From the NCBI RefSeq assembly GCF_039654945.1, contig NW_027361754.1, positions 52,576,001 to 52,640,000 of the forward strand: a DNA stretch of 64,000 bases, given 5' to 3'. The DNA is from Dendrobates tinctorius (taxonomy: Eukaryota). Positions 5,738 to 60,636 of this stretch are shown here, one piece after another. The notes beneath the pieces were generated by a model. That model saw only the letters and a program-made list of their open reading frames with translations, did no database searches and was not told the DNA's origin. A program made the position numbers and the translations under genes. Positions within the stretch are counted from its first letter, which is position 1. Every line of letters starts with the position of its first letter.

Positions 5738-6035
5738 TAGTGGTGACGTGCTCAGATACGGTGTTATCTGAGCATGCTTGGGCACTAACTGAGTATCTTC
5801 AGCGTGCTCAAAAAATATGAAAATATGTTCGAGTCCCAGTGACTGCTGTTAGCCACAACATATGCAGGGATTGCCTAACAAACAGATAATCCCTGCATGT
5901 GTTGAGGCTGTTGAACAGCTGTGAGACATGCAGCTGCTGGAAATAGAACATATTTTTTGAGCACGCCGAGGTCATTCCGTTAGCTCCCGAGTATGCTCAG
6001 ATAACACCTTATCCATGCACGTTCACTCATCACTA
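5738..6035. mobile_element. Palindromic hAT MITE, same family as 1000-1708
   Basis: Ends TAGTG... and ...CTCATCACTA. It shares the internal palindrome gattgcctaacaaacagataatccctgcatgtg. Confidence 0.75.
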
Positions 6036-7001
6036 ATGATGATGTTTCTGATTGAATGACTGCAGAGAAATTATGATATTATATTAGCAAATTGTACAGC
6101 TTCTTTATACAAAACATGACCTTCATTTTCTAAAACCTGAAATACCACTTTAATTCTTCTTCTTGCATTGATATTAACAATAGAACTTAGAGGGGTTTAA
6201 ACATTTCAAGTGTAAAATACCCAATATACAGTGTAAAGGATTTCTTGTGCAGATTATCGCAGGCGGCAAATACAAGTTTTAATTCCAGGTTAAGAAATAT
6301 ATGATTGTACTTTCATCTCACAATTTATAGCTCATTTCAATGCATTTAAATATATTTAAATAGATTGCATCAAGTGTTGTAAGATCAGCACAATGCCAGT
6401 ACATGTTCAATGTAATTACCACCCATTTGTTTGTGGTGGTTGGGGTTAATTAATATGGATGTTCAATTATTGTTGGAAAGAGTTATTGATAGTGATATCT
6501 ATAATAGGCAACCTGTTGGGAATATGTGGCGTGTTGCAGAATATTGAGATGCAAAGCTTTTAATAGGTTACAGTGTGTGTGGCCATAAATTAAACAGTTA
6601 TCACTTGCAGCACAGAACAAATGGTAACAACCGGCATTTCTATCATACAACATGGACTATGTTCTATGTATATATCTTTCTTGAGAAAATATGGCTTTTA
6701 TTCACTTATCTTTGCTTTCTTAGTAAAGTCAAGCTCCTCTAGTAAATGTCATTTGTGCAGTAGCTTTGGACAATCATAATCAGAAAGCAAAGCCGTACAT
6801 AGAGGAAGGGAAGGTTTCATTGCCACTGCTATGAAGGTTGTGTTCGATGAGGGAAGTTCAGTGGTAAAAAATATGTAGACACAAGACTTTTTGTAGAACT
6901 AATTGATTTACACATTAGACACAGATCTTTACCAGGCTGAAGTTTCATAAGTTGATTATGAACATGGAGATAACCATCTCTCAATATCTCTAGACTTGAG
7001 G

Positions 7002-22340: not shown

Positions 22341-22534
22341 GTAAATGAAATCCAAATTGGGATTCCACCTCTGGCTTTGATTTCTTGTTCAATTACCTAT
22401 CTCTAAAACAATATCTCTATTAGTGATGAGCGAGCATGCTCAGTGCTCGCCCAAGCATTTCACTGCTCGAGATGCTCGGCGCTCTCCGAGTATTTCTGGG
22501 ATTATTCGGCGGGAGCTCGGGTCCCCACCCTGCA

Positions 22535-22855
22535 AGCTTCCTACTCCACACTGATGAGGGGCAATACCCCGAAACAGCTGTATGTGGATGGATACCATGT
22601 TTTGGCATAGGTGGTTTCCTTCATTGGAGACTGCCCTTCCCGTGGTTGTTCCTTCCTGGGCAAAGACCTGGCTGGTCATTGCTTGCGTTGAGAAACATGT
22701 GATGGTGTCTCCGCGGCTTCTGTTTTGCATGTTTTACATATTTCCCATAAGGGATGGGGGCAGTGCTCTAGAATCACTGCGTTGAGAAACACGTGATGGT
22801 GTCTCCGCAGTGTCGGATGTTGATCTCCATGAGTTCATTCATCCTCCTTTTCATA
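22535..22855 (+). mobile_element. Retrozyme-like 321-bp insertion carrying a hammerhead ribozyme
   Basis: 9-bp duplication caccctgca at 22526-22534 and 22856-22864, non-coding body, hammerhead near the 5' end. Confidence 0.75.
22545..22588 (+). ncRNA. Minimal type I hammerhead ribozyme
   Basis: Stem I UCCACA/UGUGGA; core CUGAUGA; stem II GGGG-CAAUA-CCCC; GAAA; palindromic stem III CAGCUG; GUA triplet with the predicted cut after 22582. Confidence 0.88.
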
Positions 22856-24462
22856 CACCCTGCATGTTTGGCGCTCTTTAGAGCGCCAATCAACATGCAG
22901 GGATTGTCTGCCACACACTGTAATGCCGCAGACATGTTGGTTGTGGCATTACAGTGATTGGCTGGCCGTACAGCGTCATCAGGTCTATAGTAGACCGAAC
23001 GCCGCCCTGCTCGTCACAGTCTGCTCCGGACTCAGGCAGTGTAGGGAGAGTTGCTGCTGAGATAGGGAGAGAGTACTCGAGTATTAGGAGCTACTCGTAA
23101 CGAGTACAGCGAGTCCGAGTATTTCACTACTCGCTCATCCCTAATCAGAGGCTGTGCAGATCTAGTGGTGCTTATATTAGGAAAGGATTTTCTGGATATT
23201 TTCCCCTTAAGACAGCTATTGCACTTCATCATTTGACTACACTGGTTGATTTCAATACCATTTGCAAGTTGAGCTAGTTTCCTTACTGCTTTTGGGTCTC
23301 TGTGCCTAAGACATTTGTGCCATACTTGGATACAGTTCTTATGTAGATCTTGTCTAGCACTGTACACTCTTTCCTTGCATTTTAGCTGATAAAGTTCATC
23401 TTGGATTTTTTCTTCTACGAGAGTGCGACCCATCTTTGAGATGATGCAGCTGTTATCTTTAAAAAGTAACTACATTCCCCTTTTGTGTGAGATTCTTTAC
23501 TGACAGAAGATTACTTTCAAGGCTGGGAACATAGAGAACATCCTTTTTTGGGATCTTTCTGCTTTGTGCTGTGGAAACTGGACAGTGGAGGTAGCTGTAT
23601 CCTACTTCTTCTGTAGTCATATAGTGACCATTAGCTAAGATGACTTTTTCTGAAAGGTCAGTGAAGAAATCCTTGCTATTTGTCATATGGCTGGCTGCTT
23701 GCACCAGAATCTATACACCATATATGCTTTGCAGGTTATCCTGTACTGGCATTAAATGCAGTTTCAACACATGCACAATCTTCCTTTACAGCTGTTTTAA
23801 CCCTTTGATGACTGATCTACTTTTTAAGCTGACTCATTCTTGCTTATCAAATTCTGCAGTCTGCTTTAAGGTGACCAGGCTTTTTACAGAAAAAACATCC
23901 ATGAGTTTCTCTTAGATTGCTCTTATATTTAGGGAAATACTGTGTCATTAATGCTGTTTCTTCTCTGGATTCATTACTGCTGCTTACATGCTGCCTTTTT
24001 CTGTTGAAGTCGTCCACAAGTTTGCCTTTAACATACTCTAGTGTCAGCTCATCATCTGGCCGTGCATCTAGTGCAGTCACGAGTGTGTCATAACTTTCTG
24101 GAAGACCACTTAATAAAAGTGCATCAACATCAAAATCTTTAATTTCTTCTCCAATACCACTGAGACGCTCCAAAATCTCTATGGTGTTTCTTATATAGCC
24201 CTGCATATTCTGTCCATCACTTAGCTTAGACTGATAAAGCTTTCTCATGAGATAAAGTTTATTGCTGAGATTTGATCTTTCATGCACTTTCTGTAACTCA
24301 TCCCAAATCTCCTTTGCAGTTGCACACTTGCATATATGCACAATCTGATTATAATCTACACTGAGGGAGTTCGTGCTTTGTGCTTTCTGATCCTTCTCTA
24401 GTCAATCATCTGGTAATGGATGAGGCACTTGTCCCTGAGAATATTTCCACGTACCTTCTCTT

Positions 24463-39100: not shown

Positions 39101-39789
39101 TCTGTGTCTGTGGCTCGCTCCACTGTTTGTGGGACTTCTGAATTATTAGGAGGTAAGAAAAAAACCCATGACTTATTGATTGTAGTGAGCCAAATGCATG
39201 CCTGACCTCTTCCTTTATAAGGTCCATTGACACAGTTTTTTTTACAAGGAACTAGTGGATTGCACTGAAAATCTACACAAAAATGCGTATCTGATAATAG
39301 TTTTCCAAGGCAAATGACCTAAAATCAGAGGGTAATATGTTTCATCAGGCTGGTTGTAGCCTAACTAGAAATAAACAGATTATTTTGATACCAGACATCC
39401 AGAGTTCCTCTCTGGTCTGGACACAGGTTCCTGATCTGTTTACATGAGATCAGAGGAAATTTTCCCTTGAGTTATCTCCTGATTAATCCTAGAATGATAT
39501 TCAGTACATTATCAAAATGAATAAACTCACAAAATAAATCCAAATATCTTACATCAGCAAGATGGTACCCACAATTACAAAGCATTTATATGTGAGCACT
39601 AGAGTTGAGCGATACCATCCGATACTTCAAAGTATCGGATCGGAATGGATCGGCCGATCTTAAAAAAAAGTATCGGTATCGCCGATTCCGATACCGGAAG
39701 TCCCATTCAAGTCTATGGGACTTCCGGTATCGGAATAAGAAAAATCCTGTTTTTCCCTTGTACAGCCTCTCTGGGGTCTGTACGGGCCT

Positions 39790-40030
39790 TTCGGGGGGCT
39801 GTGCCGGCCTGCCAGGGGGTCTGTGCAGGCTCCGGTGGTCTGTGCCGGCCTGCCGGGGGGCTGTGCAGGCTCCGGTGGGCTGTGCCGGCCTGCCGGGGGG
39901 CTGTGCCGGCCTGCCGGGGGGCTGTGCCGGCCTGCCGGGGGGCTGTGCAGGCTCCGGGGGGCTGTGCCGGCCTGCCGGGGGGCTGTGCCGGCCTGCCGGG
40001 GGGCTGTGCAGGCTTCGGGGGTCTGTGCAG
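39790..40030. repeat. GC-rich ~21-bp minisatellite, mirrored at 42485-42640
   Basis: Unit gctgtgccggcctgccggggg. Confidence 0.9.
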
Positions 40031-40164
40031 GCATCGTCCGATGGGACTACAAGTCCCATCGGGCGATGCCTGCTACCATGACAGTGATTGACACATTAGC
40101 CAATGATGGGACAGTAGTAGTCCCATCATCCGGCTAATGTGTTGAATGTAAAAAAAAAAAAAAA

Positions 40165-41020
40165 ATTACATGCTACATACATGCTACATACATACAACAT
40201 GCATACTACATACATGCTACATTCATACTACATACTACATACATGCTACATTCATACTACATATATACTACATGCAACATACATACTACATATATACTAC
40301 ATGCATGCAACATGCATACTACATATATACTACATGCAACATACATACTACATATATACTACATGCATGCAACATGCATACTACATATATACTACATGCA
40401 ACATACATACTACATATATACTACATGCATGCAACATGCATACTACATATATACTACATGCTACATACATACTACATATATACTACATACATACTGCATG
40501 CTACATACATACTACATGCTACATACATACCACATACATACTACATACATACTACATGCTACATATATACTACATATATACTACATGCTACATACATACT
40601 ACATATATACTACATGCAACATACATACTACATATATACTACATGCATGCAACATGCATACTACATATATACTACATGCTACATACATACTACATATATG
40701 CTACATACATACTACATACATACTACATGCTACATACATACTACATATATACTACATACATACTACATACATACTACATGCATGCTACATACATACTACA
40801 TGCTACATACATACCACATACATACTACATACATACTACATGCTACATACATACTACATATATACTACATGCATGCTACATACATACTGCATGCTACATG
40901 CATGCTACATGCATGCTACATACATACTACATGCTACATACATACCACATATATACTACATACATACTACATACAATACATTCATACAATACATACATAG
41001 ACATACAGTACATATAACAT
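40165..41020. repeat. Compound (CATA/CTA/CATG) microsatellite, left arm
   Basis: Direct inspection. Confidence 0.95.
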
Positions 41021-41419
41021 AGAGTAACATACTTACCAATACTTGTCACATTGTTCCCCGAAGCCATTGTCTTTTACAGAATAAATATTAACATAACAAA
41101 CCACAAAAATACTCACCCACGATCCGAAGCAGTCCACGCAGCAATGGCATAAAGTGAGACTAGGGACTTTTTTTTTTTAAGTGGCGGAGGAATACAGTGC
41201 GGAAGGATACCTACCTTCCGTCATTGGATTCCTGCAGCCCGTAGAGAACGGCAGCAACAGCTGATGCTGCAGTTCTCTACCCAAGATCGTCGTGGGACAC
41301 ACTCGTGGACTGCTTCGGATCGTGGGTGAGTATTTTTGTGGTTTGTTATGTTAATATTTATTCCGTAAAAGACAATGGCTTTGGGGAACAATGTGACAAG
41401 TATTGGTAAGTATGTTACT

Positions 41420-42317
41420 CTATGTTATATGTACTGTATGTCTATGTATGTATTGTATGAATGTATTGTATGTAGTATGTATGTAGTATATATGTGGTAT
41501 GTATGTAGCATGTAGTATGTATGTAGTATGTATGTAGCATGTAGTATGTATGTAGTATGTATGTAGCATGCATGTAGCATGCAGTATGTATGTAGCATGC
41601 ATGTAGTATATATGTAGTATGTATGTAGCATGTAGTATGTATGTAGTATGTATGTGGTATGTATGTAGCATGTAGTATGTATGTAGCATGCATGTAGTAT
41701 GTATGTAGCATGCATGTAGTATGTATGTAGTATGTATGTAGTATATATGTAGTATGTATGTAGCATGTAGTATGTATGTAGCATGCATGTAGTATATATG
41801 TAGTATGTATGTAGCATGTAGTATGTATGTAGCATGCATGTAGTATATATGTAGTATGTATGTAGCATGTAGTATGTATGTAGCATGCATGTAGTATATA
41901 TGTAGTATGTATGTAGCATGTAGTATGTATGTAGCATGCATGTAGTATGTATGTAGTATGTATGTAGTATGTATGTGGTATGTATGTAGCATGTAGTATG
42001 TATGTAGCATGCATGTAGTATGTATGTAGTATGTATGTAGTATATATGTAGTATGTATGTAGCATGTAGTATGTATGTAGCATGCATGTAGTATATATGT
42101 AGTATGTATGTATGTAGTATGTATGTAGTATATATGTAGCATGTAGTATGTATGTAGCATGCATGTAGTATATATGTGTTATGTATGTAGTATGTATGTA
42201 TATATGTGGCATGTATGTAGTATGTATGTAGTATGTATGTAGTATGTATGTGGTATGTATGTAGTATGTATGTAGCATGTAGTATGTATGTAGCATGCAT
42301 GTAGTATGTATGTAGTA

Positions 42318-42318
<1 letters not shown>
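41420..42318. repeat. Compound (TATG/TAG/CATG) microsatellite, right arm
   Basis: Reverse-complement counterpart of 40165-41020. Confidence 0.95.
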
Positions 42319-42349
<31 letters not shown>

Positions 42350-43284
42350 AACACATTAGCCGGATGATGGGACTACTACTGTCCCATCATTGGCTAATGT
42401 GTCAATCACTGTCATGGTAGCAGGCATCGCCAGATGGGACTTGCAGTCCCATCGGACGATGCTTGCACAGACCCCCGGACATCAGCACAGCCCCCCGGCA
42501 GGCCGGCACAGCCCCCCGGCAGGCCGGTACAGACCCCCACAGGGTGCACAGACCACCGGCAGGCCGGCACAGCCCCCCGGCAGGCCGGTACAGACCCCGG
42601 GCAGTCCACACAGCCCCCCGGCAGGCCGGCAGAGACCCCCGGAAGGCCCGAAATGACGGCGCATCATGATGCGCACACACCGCGCATCATGATGACGTCA
42701 GGCTGTCAATCAACTTTGAACTTCCGATTCCGATGCCGACTTCCGATATTGAAAAAATATCGGAAGTCGGTATCGGAATTCCGATACAGCAAGTATCGGC
42801 CGATACCCGATACTTGCGGTATCGGAATGCTCAACACTAGTGAGCACCAACTACAGATAATTGAGCATTTTTTGCTCTAGAACATTTATGTACCATTTGC
42901 TATATTTATTAATAGATGCTTAGTTTTGCCAGGGTTAGCTTTCCAGTTGGAAAACTTTTGAGGTGCAGTTTAAAAGCACAAAGCGTAATTACTGTACCTC
43001 CAAAACTAAGTGGAAAAAACGTAAACAAATGAACTAGAATATAAGTTGGTATGGCTACTAAACAGACAAAACCCAAAATAAAAACATAATAAGCAAATAT
43101 CCTGCAGTAAATACTGTAAATAAACAGTAATAGTGCATAAAATAATATAGAGTACTTAGTTAACATAATTTTTATCAAAAAAATGCAAAAGCCATCCCAC
43201 CACGTCACAGTGACCCTATGCAGGATAGTCCTAACCGCTAATATTAAAACTATACCATTTGTCAAATGACTTGCATGTGGCTAA

Positions 43285-44248: not shown

Positions 44249-45351
44249 CAACTCAGTGAAAGAACCAATTTTGTACTTAATGACCAAGCCAATTTTTACA
44301 ATTCTGATCGCTGTCACTTTATGAAGTTATAGCTCTGGAACGCTTCAATGTATCCCACTGATTCTGAGATGTACCTAAACAGTGGAAACCCACCCAATTC
44401 CAACTAAAACCATAACACCACCCTAACCCTAATCCCAACCCTAATCACAACCATAACGCCAACACCAATCCTAACCCAACACAACCCTAACCCGAACACC
44501 ACCCTAAACCAACACCACAACCGTAACCCTAACCGTAACCTCAACACAACCCTAACCCCAACACAACCCTAACTCTATCCCCAACCCTAACCCTAGCCCA
44601 GCCCTAGCTCAAACCCCAACCCTATCTCTACAGGCCCAACCCTTGCCCCAACTCTAATCATAGTTCAATCCTAACCCTAGCTCCAACCCTAACTCTAGCC
44701 CAACATTAACTCTAACCCCAACCCTAACCTTAACCCTAGATCTAACCCCAACCCGAACCCTAACTGCAAAGAATAGAAAAAAATGCCTTTTTTATTTTAT
44801 TATTTTTATCTAACTAAGGGGGGGCAACAAAGGGGGGTTTTATTTACTATAATTTTTATTTTGATCACTGTGAAAGGATCTATCACAGTTATCAAAATGA
44901 ACCAATTGGAAAAATCTCCTATTGTTGCCGGCCAACAGATCTCGGTGGACGCACTGTGCATGCGCCCGCCATTTTCTTCCAGGAATATTACACGGAGAAC
45001 CAGGGGATGGAGCCAGAGGGTCCATGGATGCCAGAGGTACTGGAGGGCTTGGAGGACACCATTTCTCTCTCCTCTTGTATGCTAGATCATATCAAGGGAG
45101 AGAGAAATTAATGGGAATTTGGAATTTTTCTTTTGCGGTGAATAATGGTGAACACAAGACCTCAGACGGTGAAACCCAACCCAAATCATGTTCTCTGGGG
45201 TCTCAGCTACCCCCAGTAGCCAAGATCCCAGAGATTTTCTGATGCTGGGGAGCGCTATACACTTATTTCTCAGCGCCGTTAAAAAGCGGCGCTGAGGAAT
45301 AAGTACCCTTTACTGCCGCCATTAAAAGGCGTAATGGCGATCATTAAGGGG
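44249..45351. mobile_element. piggyBac-like non-autonomous element
   Basis: TTAA at 44245-44248 and 45352-45355. The right end is CATTAAGGGG; the left TIR is degenerate. Confidence 0.6.
44400..44765. repeat. Degenerate (CCCTAA)n telomere-like array
   Basis: Repeated aaccct, aacccc and aactct hexamers. Confidence 0.88.
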
Positions 45352-45717
45352 TTAATTGAAATCCCACAATAACTTTCTGCAGGAAACAATAGCTGACAAC
45401 TGGAGCTGCGGTTGGAGTTAGAACAAAATAAACCAATTTACAGTCTGTAAAGTTGATGCTTTACTATAGAAGTGTAGCTCCTTTAGAGACCACCAATATG
45501 TCTTTATACTGACCCGAGATGTAAGAGAACTGCATTCCCTGACAGGTGACAATCCAGCAGCTGTCAGCTATACACTATAACTGACAACCTTCTGCATCAG
45601 CCATGATCACTGTTGGCACTGACAATGGTCATTTAACCCCTTAAATGCTGCTTCCAATAATGACTTTGGCATCTAAATATTTCAGGGTACTTGCCCTTCA
45701 TCAGCACAGACCAAAAC

Positions 45718-46419: not shown

Positions 46420-49400
46420 ATGATGAGTAGCACAGAGCTAAAACTCACAGTAGCTAAGCTGAATAATGAGAACTATCAGTTATGGAAGTTCAAAGTAGAG
46501 ATGTTATTGTCTAAAGATGATTTATGGGAAGTAATTACTACAGATAGACCTGATGAAGATAACCAGACATGGGATAGAAAAAATAGGCAAGCAAAAGCTA
46601 CTATCAGCCTATTACTGGATGATGCTCAATTAATTCACATAAGGAATTGGATACAGCAAAAGGAATTTGAGAGGCACTGAGAAACCTATATGAAAGATCC
46701 AGCTTAAATCAAAAGTTATTTCTGTTAAGAAAGCTATACAGTATGAGACTAAGTGCAGACAATGACATGCAGAAGCACATATTCTCTATTATGATGATAT
46801 CACAGCTGAGATCAATTTTCTGAAGATATTAAGGAAAGCTATGTAGCAGCAATATTATTGTGCAGTTTACTAGATTCATGTACTGCTTTAATAAATGCAC
46901 TAGAGACAAGACCTGAAATAGATATTACATTAGAATTTGTGAAGACCAGGCTCATAGATGAGTATCAAAGAAGAAGGAAAGAACAAACAAATGATTCTTC
47001 TACTGAAAAAGATAATGGAAATGCTCTTAAAGCTACAGAATAAAAAAAAACCTTATAATAAAGAGACAAGAGAATGTTTCAGATGTAAGAAAAAAAGACA
47101 TTTAAAGAAAGACTGTACTATATGGAAAGCAGAACAACAGAAATTACACCATAAGAAGAATACACAGAAGGTGAAAAACACAATTTCTGATTCATGTGAA
47201 AATAATTGGAATGGCTCATTTAAAGTAACTGATAAGAAATCATCATTTGGTTGGTTTATTGACTCAGGAGCAACAAGTCATATGACAAGTAATAACAATT
47301 TTTTTACTGAACTTGATTTAAATAAGAAGGAAGCCATTTATCTTGTAGATGGAAGCAAAATAACTGCAGAAGGTGTTGGACAAGGAATGCTAAACTGTTC
47401 TAACAACTATGGATAAGATTCAAAAATACTTGTACAGGATGTGTTATACGTTCCAGGATTAGAAGGTGGATTGTTATCTGTAAAACGTCTAACAGCTAAA
47501 GGACTTACTGTAAAATTCAAAGATTATGAATGTACAATACTAGCAGGAAATAAGGTAATAATCAATGTCAAGGCAATGTCAAGGCAGATGAAAAATTATA
47601 TCATCTAGACACATTAAAGGAACAGATGAAGTTGTGTACACATGATTACAAGAATTGTATTCACATGTGGCATAGACGTCTAGGACACAGACATCCTGAA
47701 AGTATAATGGAGCTACAAAGGAAAGAATTGACAAAGGATCTATTGATAACTGATTGCTCAATTACCATAAGATGTGAATGTTGTATAAAATCTAAAGCCA
47801 CAAGGATATCTATTCCTAAAGAAGGTGAAATGAAAAGCACAAGACCACTTAATTTGGTGCATACTGACGTATGTGGACCCATGAAAGTGACTACATCAGG
47901 AGGCAATTGATATATGGTGACTTTTATAGATGACTACTCAAGATACACAGTCACATACTTGATCAAGAACAAAAGAGAAGTTTTCAATAAACTAGTAGAC
48001 TTTTCAAAAGCTTTTGATGTGGTGCCACACAAAAGGTTGATACATAAAATGAGAACAATGGGGATAGGGGAAAATATGTGTAAGTGGGTTAAGAGCTGGC
48101 TCAGGGATAAGAAACAAAGGGTGGTTATTAATGAAGCACACTCGGATTGGATCACGGTTAGTAGTGGGGTACCACAGGGGTCAGTATTGGGCCTGCTTCA
48201 TTTTAACATATTTAATAATTACCTTGTAGGTGGCATAGAGAGTACAATTTCAATATTTGCAGATGACACTAAACTCTGCAGGGTAATCAATACAGAGGAA
48301 GACAATTTTATATTACAGGAGGATTTATGTAAACTAGAAGCTTGGGCTGATAAATGGCAAATGAGCTTTATTGGGGATAAATGTAAGGTCATCACTTGGG
48401 TAGAACAAACAAGATGTATAATTATGTGCTTAATTGTAGAACACTGGGCAAAACTGTCACTGAAAAAGATCTGGGTGTATGGGTGGATGACAAACTCACA
48501 TTTAGCGGCCAGTGTCAGGCAGCTGATGCAAAGGCAAATAAAATAATGGGATGCATTAAAAGAGGCATAGATGCTCATGAGGATAAAATAATTTTACCTC
48601 TATATAAGTCACTAGTGCGACCACACTTAGAATACTGTGTACAGTTCTGGTCTCCGGTGTATAAGAAAGACATAGCTGAACTGGAGCGGGTGCAGAGAAG
48701 AGCGACCAAGGTTATTAGAGAGCTGGGGTGTCTGCAATACCAGGACACGTTATTACACCTTGGGTTATTTAGTTTGGAAAATCGAAGGCTTAGGGGTGAT
48801 CTTATTACAATGTATAAATATAAGCGGGGACAGTACAAAGACCCTTCTAATGATCTTTTTACTCTTAGACCTGTGACGAAGAAAAGGGGGCATCCTCTAT
48901 GTCAGGAGGAAAGAAGGTTTAAGCATAATCACAGACGCGGATTTTTTAATGTAAGAGCAGTGAGACTATGAAACTCTCTGCCATATGATGCCTTTCTTGA
49001 AAAGTATAATATTACAGGGTATATACACTAGTTTCCTTGATATTGCGTTGATCCAGGGAGCTAGTCTGACTGCCATATGTGGAGTCGGGAAGGAATTTTT
49101 TTCCTCATTGCGAAGCTTACTGTTTGCCACATGGGTTTTTTTTGCCTTCCTCTGGATCAACATGTTAGGGTAAGTTAGGATAGGATATGGCTTGAACTAG
49201 ATGGACTTAAAGTATTCCTTCAACCTTAATAACTATGTTACTATGTTACTATGTTACATGACAAAGTCGAATAACAAGTTTCAGAGGAAACCAATTGTCA
49301 TAAGAAGTGTTAATGGAGGTTAATTTACAGGACACGAAATAGAAAACTGCTTAAGACAAAATGGTATAGAACATCAAAAGACTGTTCCATATACACCTGA

Positions 49401-50019: not shown

Positions 50020-50590
50020 ATTTTTTCCCACACCGTATAGAGCTGTACGCTCCTCACACACTATCGTGGACCGGCTGGTATCACGGACAAATACATGCTG
50101 ACTATCTTTGTGTGAGTCCGGAATTAAATACAGAGATTTAAATTTTCCACTACACTGTATACAGCTGTACGTTTCTGATACAGTACCGTATATCTGCTGT
50201 TTGGATTACAGTCAAATCCATACTGGGAGAGCATCTGTGTGTGACTAAGGAAATATATACGGAGATTTAAATTTTCCCCTACACCGTAAACAGCTGTATG
50301 TTTCTGATACAGTACCGTATATCTGTTGTTTGGATTACGGTCAAATCCATAGTGGGAGAGTGTCTGTGTGTGACTAAGGAAATATATACGGAGATTAAAA
50401 TTTTCCCCTACACCATATACAGCTGTACGTTTCTGATACAGTACCATATATCTGCTGTTTGGCTTACGGTCAAATCCATAGTGGGAGAGCGTCTGTGTGT
50501 GACTAAGAAAATATATACGGAGATTTAAATTTTCCCCTACACCTTATACAGCTGTACGCTCCTCATACAGTACCATATATCTGCTGGTAT
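50020..50590. repeat. 129-bp tandem repeat upstream of the hAT transposase
   Basis: cagctgta...gatacagtacc recurs near 50162, 50291, 50420 and 50549. Confidence 0.92.
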
Positions 50591-58084: not shown

Positions 58085-59347
58085 TATGGGCCCATCATAC
58101 ACTGGAGCATCATCCATGGGGCCCATCATATACTGCAGCATCATATGGGGCCCATTATATTTGGAGCATTATATAGGCCCATCATACAATGTAGCATCAT
58201 CCATGGGGTCAATCATACACTGGAGCATCATATGGGGCCCATCATATACTAGAGCATCATATGGGGCCCATTATATATGGAGCATTATATAGGCCCATCA
58301 TACAATGGAGCATCATCCATGGGGCCCATCATATACTGGAGCATCATATGGGGTTCATTATTTATGGGGCATCATATAGGGTATGGAGCATTATATGGAG
58401 CACATATGGAGCCTATTCTGCATGGAGCATTATATGGAGCCCATTCTGTATGGAGCAATATATGGGGCCCATCATATACTGTATGGAGCTTTATATGCGA
58501 CTCATTATACTGTATGGAGCAATATGTGGGGCTCATTCTACTCCATGGGGACCATCCGACACTGTATAGCACATTATATGGGGACCATCATATACTTCAA
58601 TAGATTTCCCTGTCTGAACAATTAAGCAAGAATTAGGGATCCAAAGAGTTTTAGCAAAATTAGTAAATTTTATTACACAAAAATTAAAAACAGAGCATCG
58701 TTGCTAATGCAGGCAGTGATAAGCATAATAGACACAAACTAACACCCAAATAAATAACTCAATGTATACAGTCAATATTGAGGAATTTTAGTCAAACATA
58801 GTGCTTAGTGATACTAAAAACTGTCCATGATATTTACGTTTTTTTGTATACTATATAACAGCTAGCTAGCACTTGATCTGATGGTAACAATAGCGGGCTT
58901 ATCCCTGCAAGAAGTTGTTTGGATTTACCCTTAGATTTATATCAGCGGGCTAATACCTGCTGCTATGTATACTATCTACCTATGCAAATGTGACTAGGGG
59001 GCTGCAGACAGCGGCAGCATTCTGGGCACTTAAAGTAAGTAAGTCTCAGCACCTTCATGCAGTAAAAACTGTCCATGACATTTACTTTTTTTCTGTATAC
59101 TATACAACAGCTAGCTAGCCCTTGCTCTGTTGGTAACAATAGCGGGATTATCCCTGCTGGTAGCTGTTTGGACAATCTTTACCCTTAGATCAATAGCAGC
59201 GGGCTAATACCTGCTACTATGTGCATTATCTACCTATGCAAATGTGACTAGCAGATCCTTTTGGATAGAGTATTTTATCTCAGGCTTACTGTGATCTGCT
59301 TGACCAGGATAAAATTACTACCACATGAGAAGTTTAACCATTTATTT

Positions 59348-59390
59348 TCCCAACGCGTTTCAAAGTGTGAACCACTTCTTCCTCAGGGGA
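59348..59390 (-). ncRNA. Minimal hammerhead ribozyme (inverted copy)
   Basis: Exact reverse complement of 59429-59471. Confidence 0.7.
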
Positions 59391-59428
59391 TGACAGGGGA
59401 TGACATGTCATCAGGGGATGACATGTCA

Positions 59429-59471
59429 TCCCCTGAGGAAGAAGTGGTTCACACTTTGAAACGCGTTGGGA
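59429..59471 (+). ncRNA. Minimal hammerhead ribozyme, Penelope type
   Basis: Stem I UCCC/GGGA; core CUGAGGA plus one extra A; stem II GAAGUG-GUUCA-CACUUU; GAAA; palindromic ACGCGU; GUU triplet. Confidence 0.72.
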
Positions 59472-60636
59472 AAATAAATGGTTAAACTTCTCATGTGGTA
59501 GTAATTTTATCCTGGTCAAGCAGCGCACAGTAAGCCTGAGACAAAATACTCTATCCAAAAGGATCTATATTGGTGGTCACGGAGTGGACCTTCGGGCGTG
59601 CAGCAAGCTGACATTGGTTTATATGCCTATATCTTTCCTGGAAAGGGTGAGTAGATTTCATCAGTCTTTATTCCATTTTCCACCCAGATAAGACCCTATT
59701 GCGCTTTTTCTTTTTCCTTAGTTTTTTTACCAATGTGACTAGCAGAGCACCCGGTAAATTAATCCAATTAACGGGGCGACAGGGAGCGGCAGCACTTTTG
59801 TCACTCCTTGTAAGAGAATCTCAGCACCTTTGGATTACTCAAGGTTGCTGGATTTCTTCATATAGTGAAAACTGTTTATGACATTTACGTCTTTATGTAT
59901 ACTATATAATAATGGGCTGACCCTTGCTCTGATGGTTGCAGTGGCGGGCTAATCACTGCTGGTAGCTGCTGATATAATTGTCACTTTTAGATTAATAGCA
60001 GTGGGTCAATTCCTGCTACTATTTGTACCATCTAAATTATGCAAATGCGATTAGCGCAGCACCTTGAAAATTAATTCAATTAACGGGTATGAAGTATTAC
60101 TAAACACTATGTGTGACTAAAATTCCTCAATATTGACTGTATACATTGAGTTATTTATTTGGGTGTTAGTTTGTGTCTATTATGCTTATCACTACCTGCA
60201 TTAGCAACGATGCTCTGTTTTTAATTTTTGTGTAATAAAATTTACTAATTTTGCTAAAACTCTTTGGATCCCTAATTCTTGCTTAATTGTTCAGACAGGG
60301 AAATCTATTGATATATATTGTGTTTTGAGTTGTGCTATTACGTGTTTCCCATTAGTAGGGGATATTCTTGCATTTACCATCATATACTGTAGCATTATGT
60401 GGAGCTCATCATATACTGTATGGAACATTATATGGGACCAATTATTCTGTATGGAGCAATATATGGGGCTCATTATTCTGTATTGCGCACTATGTGGTGG
60501 CCATAATACTGTATGGCGGAATATACTGTCCGGTTTTTGAACTATTGAAGAATTTAAAATAGATATCAGTCATGTAATGTAAGAAGTGAAGTATTTGTCA
60601 TTGCACTGTACCAATATTTCTCTGCCGTATGGGAGC

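What the first reader, a model, noticed from the sequence alone, without database searches (positions are those of the whole stretch)
22535..22855. Retrozyme-like monomer: a non-coding 321-bp insertion with an intact hammerhead and a 9-bp TSD
Seen: all conserved hammerhead core bases and all three stems are present (UCCACA-CUGAUGA-GGGGcaauaCCCC-GAAA-CAGCUG-UA-UGUGGA). The motif begins 10 nt inside an insertion bounded by caccctgca. The body has a 31-bp direct repeat (about 22685 and 22778) and no recognisable ORF. Known: newt satellite 2 and metazoan non-LTR retrozymes are roughly 300-nt units with minimal type I hammerheads whose palindromic stem III works as a dimer, and they yield small linear or circular RNAs. 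Inference: this is one retrotransposed, circularly permuted monomer of a frog retrozyme family, now sitting inside a hAT MITE. The class is known; this family may not be described.
Basis: partly seen in the sequence, partly recalled or inferred. Interest (0 to 1): 0.85.

Follow-up and report, generated by a model that had tools for sequence, protein, structure and literature searches.

The report
Solo frog hammerhead retrozyme insertion
A 321-base non-coding insert inside a small DNA transposon carries a complete self-cutting "hammerhead" RNA motif of the amphibian type; it is most likely one stranded copy of a known kind of reverse-transcribed repeat (a retrozyme), so it is real but ordinary.

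Summary
A full type I hammerhead lies at 22545-22588 (+), or 22539-22592 with a distal stem I. It has every conserved core base, a 6-bp helix I, a 4-bp helix II and a palindromic helix III (A-CAGCUG-U), and should cut after A22582. My structure-descriptor scan finds it once in the window and never in 300 shuffles. Rfam's curated models do not reach threshold (best 18 bits against a cut-off of 48.5). Two copies of the motif are predicted to fold into the double hammerhead. The 321-bp body (22535-22855) is flanked by an exact 9-bp repeat (CACCCTGCA), has no poly(A), no homologous ORF and a 31-bp internal repeat, and interrupts a hairpin of a TIR-bounded, hAT-like MITE.

The ribozyme layout matches the axolotl retrozyme Ax353 hammerhead and differs from the Penelope-type minimal hammerheads at 59.3 kb in this window. 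My best reading is a solo, probably inert, reverse-transcribed unit of an amphibian non-LTR retrozyme, probably mobilised by Penelope-like machinery.

Not shown: other copies, tandem arrays, a circular RNA template, cleavage. No tool here reaches the rest of this frog genome. The class is already described in salamanders and Xenopus, solo monomers included. Earlier notes of this scan report similar, abundant retrozymes elsewhere in this genome. Interest is low.

The parts
22421..23143 (.). Host MITE-like element with terminal inverted repeats (TAGTGATGAGCGAG / TAGGGATGAGCGAG), hAT-like TIR class
   Evidence: 16-nt inverted repeat, 94% complementary, at 22419-22434 and 23130-23145. The same TIR class bounds elements with 8-bp TSDs elsewhere in the window: 1000-1708 at 7/8 and 39600-42839 at 8/8. 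This copy's own 8-bp flanks match at only 3/8.
22526..22534 (.). Left copy of the 9-bp target-site duplication CACCCTGCA
22535..22855 (+). 321-bp non-coding insertion (retrozyme-like unit); 48.9% G+C; no poly(A) tail
   Evidence: No similarity to related MITE copies in the window. No other copy in the window.
22539..22592 (+). Type I hammerhead ribozyme including a possible distal helix I (UCC 22539-41 / GGA 22590-92) and a UAC/U internal loop; core motif 22545-22588
   Evidence: Sub-threshold Rfam alignments place the core, helix I and the cut site correctly.
22582..22583 (+). Predicted self-cleavage site (after A22582, GUA triplet)
   Evidence: Follows from standard hammerhead numbering applied. 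Not tested experimentally.
22684..22714 (+). First copy of the 31-nt internal direct repeat; folds as a hairpin module
22778..22808 (+). Second copy of the 31-nt repeat; sits inside a strong hairpin closed by CACUGCG/CGCAGUG (about 22775-22812), 43 nt from the 3' end of the insert
22856..22864 (.). Right copy of the 9-bp target-site duplication; continuous with the MITE hairpin arm

Best explanation
This is a single, dispersed ('solo') DNA copy of an amphibian-type non-LTR retrozyme: a short, non-coding, hammerhead-bearing repeat.

Inferred history: a plus-strand RNA of the family was reverse-transcribed at a staggered break inside a hAT-like MITE. The enzyme was probably the reverse transcriptase/endonuclease of a Penelope-like element. 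The event left a 9-bp target duplication and no poly(A). The template was not cut at this hammerhead, or had been re-ligated, because the cleavage site lies 48 nt inside the copy.

Shown: the motif, the insert boundaries, the lack of coding capacity, and the predicted dimer fold.

Inferred: the ribozyme needs a second copy, because its helix III is only 2 bp plus a palindromic tetraloop and becomes an 8-bp helix in a dimer. A lone unit therefore cannot release a unit-length or circular RNA, and this copy is most likely an inert by-product of the family's spread.
For: - Complete hammerhead, unique in the window and absent from 300 shuffles.
- The 44-nt motif folds at -15.4 kcal/mol.
- Two 54-nt copies co-fold at -42.1 kcal/mol, against 2 x -18.1 for two monomers. 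The co-fold is exactly the double hammerhead, with an 8-bp intermolecular helix III and helices I and II intact. The lone monomer prefers an inactive fold.
- The architecture equals the 'canonical' metazoan/amphibian type I motif as described in PMC4209133 and PMC7229834: helix I 6 bp, helix II 4 bp with a 5-nt loop, helix III 2 bp plus a palindromic tetraloop, GUA cut site.
- By eye it matches the axolotl Ax353 retrozyme hammerhead in that paper's supplement, including a 3-nt/1-nt internal loop in helix I.
- The size of 321 bp fits amphibian retrozyme units: about 330-350 bp in axolotl and a mean of 316 bp in Amphibia.
- Exact 9-bp TSD, no poly(A), non-coding.
- Dispersed solo monomers are a described state of these families in Xenopus.
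- No RT or GIY-YIG ORF in or next to the insert.
Against: - Only one copy could be examined. No second copy is in the window, and no tool reaches the rest of this genome. Family membership, unit length and tandem arrays are therefore unverified.
- Rfam's curated hammerhead models do not reach their gathering scores: none at gathering, best Hammerhead_3 at 18.1 bits against 48.5.
- The TSD is short, and no true empty-site copy of this MITE subfamily was available. Only distant relatives were.
- In the MFE of a hypothetical head-to-tail dimer of the whole insert, the 8-bp helix III forms but helices I and II do not.
- In Xenopus only one of nine tested retrozyme dimers cleaved in vitro, so an intact motif does not guarantee activity.
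Confidence: 0.68

Rival explanations
1. It is a severely 5'-truncated insertion of an autonomous Penelope-like element. Only the terminal non-coding part (pseudo-LTR with its hammerhead plus the 'tail') was copied before reverse transcription stopped.
For: - Most PLE insertions are 5'-truncated, carry hammerheads in their pLTRs, have variable TSDs and lack poly(A).
- Xenopus retrozyme families are sister to PLE pLTRs, so the two categories shade into each other.
- A Penelope-type insertion is present in this same window at 59253-59731.
Against: - The hammerhead is not of the PLE 'minimal' build (helix II of 6-8 bp with an unpaired 5' base, helix I of 4-5 bp). That build is what the 59.3-kb element shows. 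This one is of the canonical retrozyme/satellite-2 build.
- 273 nt follow the cut site. In the one PLE studied in vitro, reverse transcription starts about 85-92 nt after the cut.
- The 67-aa frame opening at the cut site has no homologues.
- No RT/EN remnant is nearby.
Confidence: 0.17
2. One reading: the template was a covalently closed circular retrozyme RNA, copied for exactly one turn, giving a circularly permuted monomer.
For: - The cleavage site is internal and uncut, 48 nt from the 5' end.
- The length is close to amphibian unit sizes.
- Amphibian retrozymes do accumulate as circles.
Against: - An uncut linear multimer or read-through transcript gives the same product.
- There is no terminal redundancy to show passage over a junction.
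- For a PLE in vitro, unprocessed RNA was the dominant template and hammerhead cleavage was dispensable.
- The family's unit length is unknown, so 'exactly one turn' cannot be checked.
Confidence: 0.1
3. There was no retrotransposition. The segment is an internal part of this MITE subfamily, the 9-bp repeat is chance, and the hammerhead is a fortuitous or captured motif.
For: - 9-bp repeats within 1 kb are expected by chance at about two per kb. Three direct-repeat families were found in this 1 kb.
- No true empty-site allele or copy was available.
Against: - The descriptor hit is unique, with 0 in 300 shuffles.
- The two related MITEs in the window share TIRs and the central hairpin motif but nothing with the 321-bp body. 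One has CTGCATGT uninterrupted at the insertion point.
- The repeat sits exactly where the MITE hairpin arm is broken.
Confidence: 0.05

Closest known systems
Axolotl/newt non-LTR retrozymes (satellite 2; Rtz_353 with HHR_Amex2), Cervera & de la Pena 2020, PMC7229834
   Same: - Type I hammerhead with a 6-bp helix I, a 3/1 internal loop, a 4-bp helix II with a 5-nt loop, and a helix III of A-(6-nt palindrome)-U (2 bp plus tetraloop).
- GUA cut site.
- Dimer-dependent design.
- Non-coding unit of about 320-350 nt.
   Different: - Here it is a single TSD-flanked unit, not a tandem array.
- Helix II closes with G-C rather than the U.U mismatch noted for HHR_Amex2.
- Expression and circles are untested.
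Xenopus non-LTR retrozyme families and their solo monomers (Li, Clavereau, Pollet 2026, bioRxiv 10.64898/2026.07.22.740005)
   Same: - Anuran host.
- Amphibian mean consensus of 316 bp.
- Dispersed solo monomers, interpreted as non-mobile offspring.
- Proposed dependence on Penelope-like elements.
   Different: - The host here is a poison frog according to earlier scan notes, which I did not check. No poison-frog genus name appears in that paper's main text; its species table was not available.
- Homology to any of the 57 Xenopus families could not be tested.
Penelope-like element pLTR hammerheads (min-HHR), Cervera & de la Pena 2014, PMC4209133; Frangieh et al. 2024, PMC11167929
   Same: - Palindromic helix III that works through dimers.
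- Insertion with a variable TSD and no poly(A).
- Probably the same enzymatic machinery.
   Different: - Min-HHRs have a long helix II with an unpaired 5' base and a short helix I, as seen at 59.3 kb in this window. This motif has the canonical 4-bp/6-bp build.
- There is no RT/GIY-YIG ORF.
Schistosoma Sm-alpha SINE-like hammerhead repeats (from my own knowledge, not checked here)
   Same: A dispersed, non-coding unit of about 330 nt with a canonical type I hammerhead.
   Different: Sm-alpha is described as SINE-like. I saw no B-box-like motif in this insert when reading it by eye; no scan was run.

Membership tests
Hammerhead ribozyme, type I (canonical metazoan/amphibian form) | Conserved core C3-U-G-A-N-G-A9, G12-A-A14, A15.1-U16.1 pair, H17 not G, G10.1-C11.1 | tested here: met
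   All are present at 22551-22557, 22571-22573, 22574/22581, A22582 and G22558/C22570.
Hammerhead ribozyme, type I (canonical metazoan/amphibian form) | Three helices around the core with helix I open; helix I about 6 bp, helix II about 4 bp, helix III 1-2 bp capped by a 2-4-nt palindromic loop (PMC4209133) | tested here: met
   6 bp, 4 bp, and 2 bp plus the AGCU tetraloop. The descriptor hit is unique, with 0 in 300 shuffles.
Hammerhead ribozyme, type I (canonical metazoan/amphibian form) | Reaches the curated score of an Rfam hammerhead covariance model | tested here: not met
   No hit at gathering. Best are Hammerhead_3 at 18.1 bits (cut-off 48.5) and RAGATH-1-hammerhead at 14.1 bits (cut-off 56.3). 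My reading, not tested: the very short helix III costs score.
Hammerhead ribozyme, type I (canonical metazoan/amphibian form) | Loop 1 - loop 2 tertiary contact | tested here: inconclusive
   A UAC/U internal loop followed by a 3-bp distal stem, together with a 5-nt loop 2, has the same layout as axolotl Ax353.
Hammerhead ribozyme, type I (canonical metazoan/amphibian form) | Self-cleavage | not testable with these tools
   Only the predicted double-hammerhead co-fold is available.
Non-LTR retrozyme (Cervera & de la Pena 2020; Li et al. 2026) | Tandem array of at least two consecutive units, each with a complete hammerhead (definition of an 'active' retrozyme) | tested here: not met
   There is a single unit at this locus. 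TRF finds no array here and the window holds no second copy. At best the locus is a 'solo monomer' in the sense of Li et al..
Non-LTR retrozyme (Cervera & de la Pena 2020; Li et al. 2026) | Short non-coding unit (150-450 bp), G+C below 50%, no LTR/PBS/PPT | tested here: met
   321 bp, 48.9% G+C, and no ORF with homologues. The G+C is near the upper limit.
Non-LTR retrozyme (Cervera & de la Pena 2020; Li et al. 2026) | TSD longer than 4 bp when present | tested here: met
   Exact 9-bp repeat.
Non-LTR retrozyme (Cervera & de la Pena 2020; Li et al. 2026) | Multi-copy family in the genome; full-length homology (over 80% identity across 80% of a family consensus) for a 'monomer' | not testable with these tools
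   No access to the rest of this genome or to Repbase/Dfam. Blank results: metagenome pattern scans, two ORF-based searches and the scan's own index.
Non-LTR retrozyme (Cervera & de la Pena 2020; Li et al. 2026) | Expression as linear and circular RNA of unit length | not testable with these tools
   No expression data are available.
Autonomous Penelope-like element (terminal fragment) | RT plus GIY-YIG ORF, or its remnant, contiguous with the hammerhead-bearing repeat | tested here: not met
   There is no such ORF in or beside the insert. The nearest RT (47914-48546) is a LINE-type piece inside a Copia-like element.
Autonomous Penelope-like element (terminal fragment) | Minimal hammerhead build (long helix II with an unpaired 5' base, helix I of 4-5 bp) | tested here: not met
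   Helix II here is 4 bp and helix I is 6 bp. Compare the PLE-type motif at about 59425-59475 and the description.
hAT-type MITE (the host element) | Terminal inverted repeats and an 8-bp TSD | tested here: inconclusive
   TIRs are present. This copy's flanks match at only 3/8. Elements with the same TIR class in the window have 7/8 and 8/8 TSDs.

The most novel reading that the evidence does not exclude
The insert is a unit of a poison-frog retrozyme family that shares not only the ribozyme build but real sequence ancestry with the axolotl Rtz_353/HHR_Amex2 family. On that reading one retrozyme lineage has persisted or moved across Amphibia for about 300 million years. Clean single-unit, TSD-flanked copies like this one would then record one-turn copying of circular RNA by Penelope-like reverse transcriptase.
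Probability: 0.07. Interest if true: 0.55.

Novelty: new member of a known kind. Interest (0 to 1): 0.2.

Why it matters
As it stands the finding matters little. It adds one tidy example of a solo hammerhead-retrozyme unit with clear insertion scars in an anuran. That supports the published view that these repeats spread by reverse transcription rather than only by unequal crossing-over.

Its modest value is comparative. The same window holds a canonical retrozyme-type hammerhead and Penelope-type minimal hammerheads, so the two ribozyme builds can be contrasted in one genome. The close match to the axolotl HHR_Amex2 layout suggests the canonical amphibian hammerhead is shared by frogs and salamanders.

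Tried and rejected
- Rfam at gathering over the whole window gave no family. In E-value mode only sub-threshold hammerhead alignments appeared. The weak miRNA-like hits at 22850-22968 are simply the MITE's own hairpins.
- BLASTN of the insert against the window found no second copy. It found only the internal 31-bp repeat and a 25-nt match to a decayed hammerhead-like site at 45680-45704.
- Two metagenome pattern scans, one with the hammerhead and one with the 31-nt repeat, found nothing. This was expected, because those collections are not frog DNA.
- I tried to fish other copies through spurious ORF calls in public assemblies, using the 67-aa plus-strand and 65-aa minus-strand ORFs. There were no candidates.
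- The scan's own index was blank by sequence.
- A literature search for the ribozyme's exact sequence found nothing. The held supplements of the 2026 preprint contain no hammerhead sequences.
- The 129-bp tandem repeat at 50104-50586 shares ACAGCTGTA with the motif but has no hammerhead core.
- I did not align the insert to the published axolotl Ax353/Ax330 units. Those sequences exist only as text in a supplement and have no reference. The step was left out and only the short ribozyme was compared by eye.
- SINE (Pol III) reading: by eye I saw no B-box-like motif and no A-rich tail. No scan was run.

Full report
**What is there**

On the plus strand the motif reads as follows:
- Helix I is UCCACA (22545-50) paired with UGUGGA (22583-88).
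- The core CUGAUGA follows helix I.
- Helix II is GGGG/CCCC closed by the loop CAAUA.
- GAA comes next, then helix III, A-CAGCUG-U.
- A22582 is the cleavage-site nucleotide.

All invariant hammerhead positions are present: C3 to A9, G12 to A14, the A15.1-U16.1 pair, G10.1-C11.1, and H17 not G. Outside helix I a further three pairs are possible (UCC 22539-41 with GGA 22590-92). These leave a UAC/U internal loop.

**Is it more than chance?**

I wrote a structural descriptor requiring:
- helix I of at least 5 bp;
- the core CUGANGA;
- helix II of at least 3 bp;
- GAA;
- an A...U helix III that is either palindromic or at least 3 bp;
- H17 not G.

I ran it on both strands. It finds this one site in 64 kb and nothing in 300 dinucleotide-preserving shuffles. 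The 44-nt motif folds at -15.4 kcal/mol (z = -2.5).

Rfam does not confirm it at curated thresholds. There is no hit at gathering. In E-value mode the best are Hammerhead_3 at 14.5-18.1 bits (cut-off 48.5) and RAGATH-1-hammerhead at 14.1 bits (cut-off 56.3). The latter alignment places helix I, the core, helix III and the cut site as I do. I count this as a membership criterion tested and not met. My reading, which I did not test, is that the very short helix III costs score.

**How the ribozyme would work**

Alone, the 54-nt motif prefers an inactive fold at -18.1 kcal/mol, in which CUG of the core pairs with CAG of helix III. The active fold costs 5 kcal/mol more. Two copies co-fold at -42.1 kcal/mol, 5.9 kcal/mol better than two monomers. 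The co-fold is exactly the double hammerhead: an 8-bp intermolecular helix III (ACAGCUGU with itself), with helices I and II of both copies intact.

In a hypothetical head-to-tail dimer of the whole 321-nt insert, the global MFE again contains that 8-bp helix III, but helices I and II are displaced by other pairings. The prediction is therefore supportive, not decisive.

This is the behaviour published for amphibian hammerheads: weak as monomers and efficient as dimers (PMC7229834; PMC4209133).

**Which kind of hammerhead**

PMC4209133 describes 'canonical' metazoan type I motifs as having helix I of 6 bp, helix II of 4 bp, and helix III of 1-2 bp capped by a 2-4-nt palindromic loop. It contrasts them with the 'minimal' hammerheads of Penelope-like elements (PLEs), which have a long helix II with an unpaired 5' base and a helix I of 4-5 bp.

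The motif here is of the canonical build. The supplement of PMC7229834 prints the axolotl retrozyme Ax353. Read by eye, its hammerhead has the same layout:
- a 6-bp helix I;
- a 3-nt/1-nt internal loop followed by a distal stem;
- a 4-bp helix II with a 5-nt loop (CACUA there, CAAUA here);
- a helix III of A-(6-nt palindrome)-U (CACGUG there, CAGCUG here);
- a GUA cut site followed by UG.

The Penelope-type palindromic insertion at 59253-59731 of this same window is different. It carries CUGAGGA, an unpaired A plus a 6-bp helix II, a short helix I and A-CGCG-U, which is the PLE minimal build. The ribozyme type therefore points to the retrozyme/satellite-2 class, not to the end of an autonomous PLE.

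**The insertion**

- The 321-bp body (22535-22855) lies between two exact copies of CACCCTGCA. The repeat cannot be extended on either side.
- A 9-bp repeat within a kilobase is not rare by chance. My estimate is about two per kb, and three direct-repeat families were found in this 1 kb. The case therefore rests on context.
- The right-hand copy continues into one arm of a MITE hairpin (CCCTGCATGTT ... AACATGCAGGG), while the left-hand copy stops exactly where that arm is broken.
- Two distant relatives of the MITE lie in the window, at about 1000-1708 and 5739-6040. They share its TIRs and the CATGCAGGGATTG hairpin motif but have no similarity to the 321-bp body. One has CTGCATGT uninterrupted across the insertion point.
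- The body has no poly(A), 48.9% G+C (flanks 44%) and no inverted 5' segment.
- It has no ORF with homologues. The longest internal ORF is 67 aa and starts at the AUG that overlaps the cut site.
- The 31-nt direct repeat (22684 and 22778, 97% identical) forms two similar hairpin modules. The second is closed by CACUGCG/CGCAGUG, 43 nt from the 3' end. Whether these bind the mobilising enzyme is speculation.

**The host**

The host element has 16-nt TIRs. The same TIR class bounds a 709-bp element with a 7/8 TSD (1000-1708) and a 3.2-kb element with a perfect 8-bp TSD (39600-42839). This is typical of hAT elements. This copy's own flanks match at only 3/8, so 'hAT MITE' is plausible but not proven for this copy.

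**What it most likely is**

My best explanation is a solo DNA copy of an amphibian non-LTR retrozyme, made by target-primed reverse transcription and probably using PLE machinery. I put this at about 0.68.

The literature fits this reading:
- Such repeats are about 330-350 bp in axolotl.
- They average 316 bp in Amphibia and occur in all seven amphibians sampled. In Xenopus they appear as evenly dispersed solo monomers as well as arrays (bioRxiv 10.64898/2026.07.22.740005).
- Those authors regard monomers as offspring that cannot transpose, and regard retrozymes as non-autonomous derivatives of PLE pLTRs.
- PLEs are common in anurans (PMC12822217).

A lone unit has one cleavage site and no partner in cis. 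It cannot release a unit-length RNA or a circle, so I expect this copy to be inert.

**Rivals**

1. A 5'-truncated autonomous PLE (about 0.17). Against it: the ribozyme build; 273 nt after the cut site where the one PLE studied in vitro starts reverse transcription about 85-92 nt after the cut; and the absence of any RT/EN remnant.
2. The internal, uncut cleavage site is compatible with it, but equally with an unprocessed linear template. Unprocessed RNA was the dominant substrate for a PLE in vitro. There is no terminal redundancy and the unit length is unknown.
3. No insertion at all, with a chance repeat (about 0.05).

**What could not be done**

The decisive test is to find other copies, arrays and empty sites in the same genome. 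That needs the assembly, which none of the tools reach. All of the following were blank:
- BLAST within the window;
- two metagenome pattern scans;
- two ORF-based searches of public protein calls;
- the scan's own sequence index;
- a literature string search.

**Earlier notes of this scan (unchecked by me)**

- The notes indicate the genome is a poison frog.
- They say similar hammerhead retrozyme insertions with 331-353-nt units, some from 'very abundant' families, were found on other pieces of this genome and judged ordinary.
- These notes agree with my reading but are not independent evidence.

**Verdict**

This is a new member of a known kind at most, and interest is low (0.2).

Noticed in passing
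window 45656-45704 (-): Hammerhead-like relic: CUGAUGA, a 4-bp helix II (AGGG/CCCU, loop CAAGUA) and GAAA. It is 88% identical over 25 nt to the motif at 22551-22574, but no helix I or helix III partner follows. It is probably a decayed related ribozyme, or chance.
   Followed up: partly
window 59253-59731: Penelope-type palindromic insertion with a 15-bp TSD (AATGTGACTAGCAGA). I used it here as a contrast to the canonical motif.
   Followed up: partly
window 39600-42839: A 3.2-kb element with hAT-like TIRs (TAGAGTTGAGCGA / TAGTGTTGAGCAT) and a perfect 8-bp TSD (GTGAGCAC). Its interior is mostly two inverted blocks of TACATAC-type microsatellite and GC-rich 21-mers.
   Followed up: no
window 44414-44764: Degenerate interstitial telomere-like array, (CCCTAA)n with variants, about 350 bp.
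   Followed up: no
window 46420-48971: Gag-like and integrase-like ORFs that look Copia-type by eye (not run against Pfam), interrupted by a reverse-transcriptase fragment (RVT_1, E = 2e-20) that looks LINE-type. A separate Copia gag (Pfam Retrotran_gag_2) lies at 23847-24341 (-), just right of the host MITE.
   Followed up: partly
window 22582-22785 (+): The AUG overlapping the predicted cleavage site opens a 67-codon frame. It has no homologues and is probably meaningless. In the anole PLE PAc, however, the ORF start also sits within the hammerhead.
   Followed up: partly
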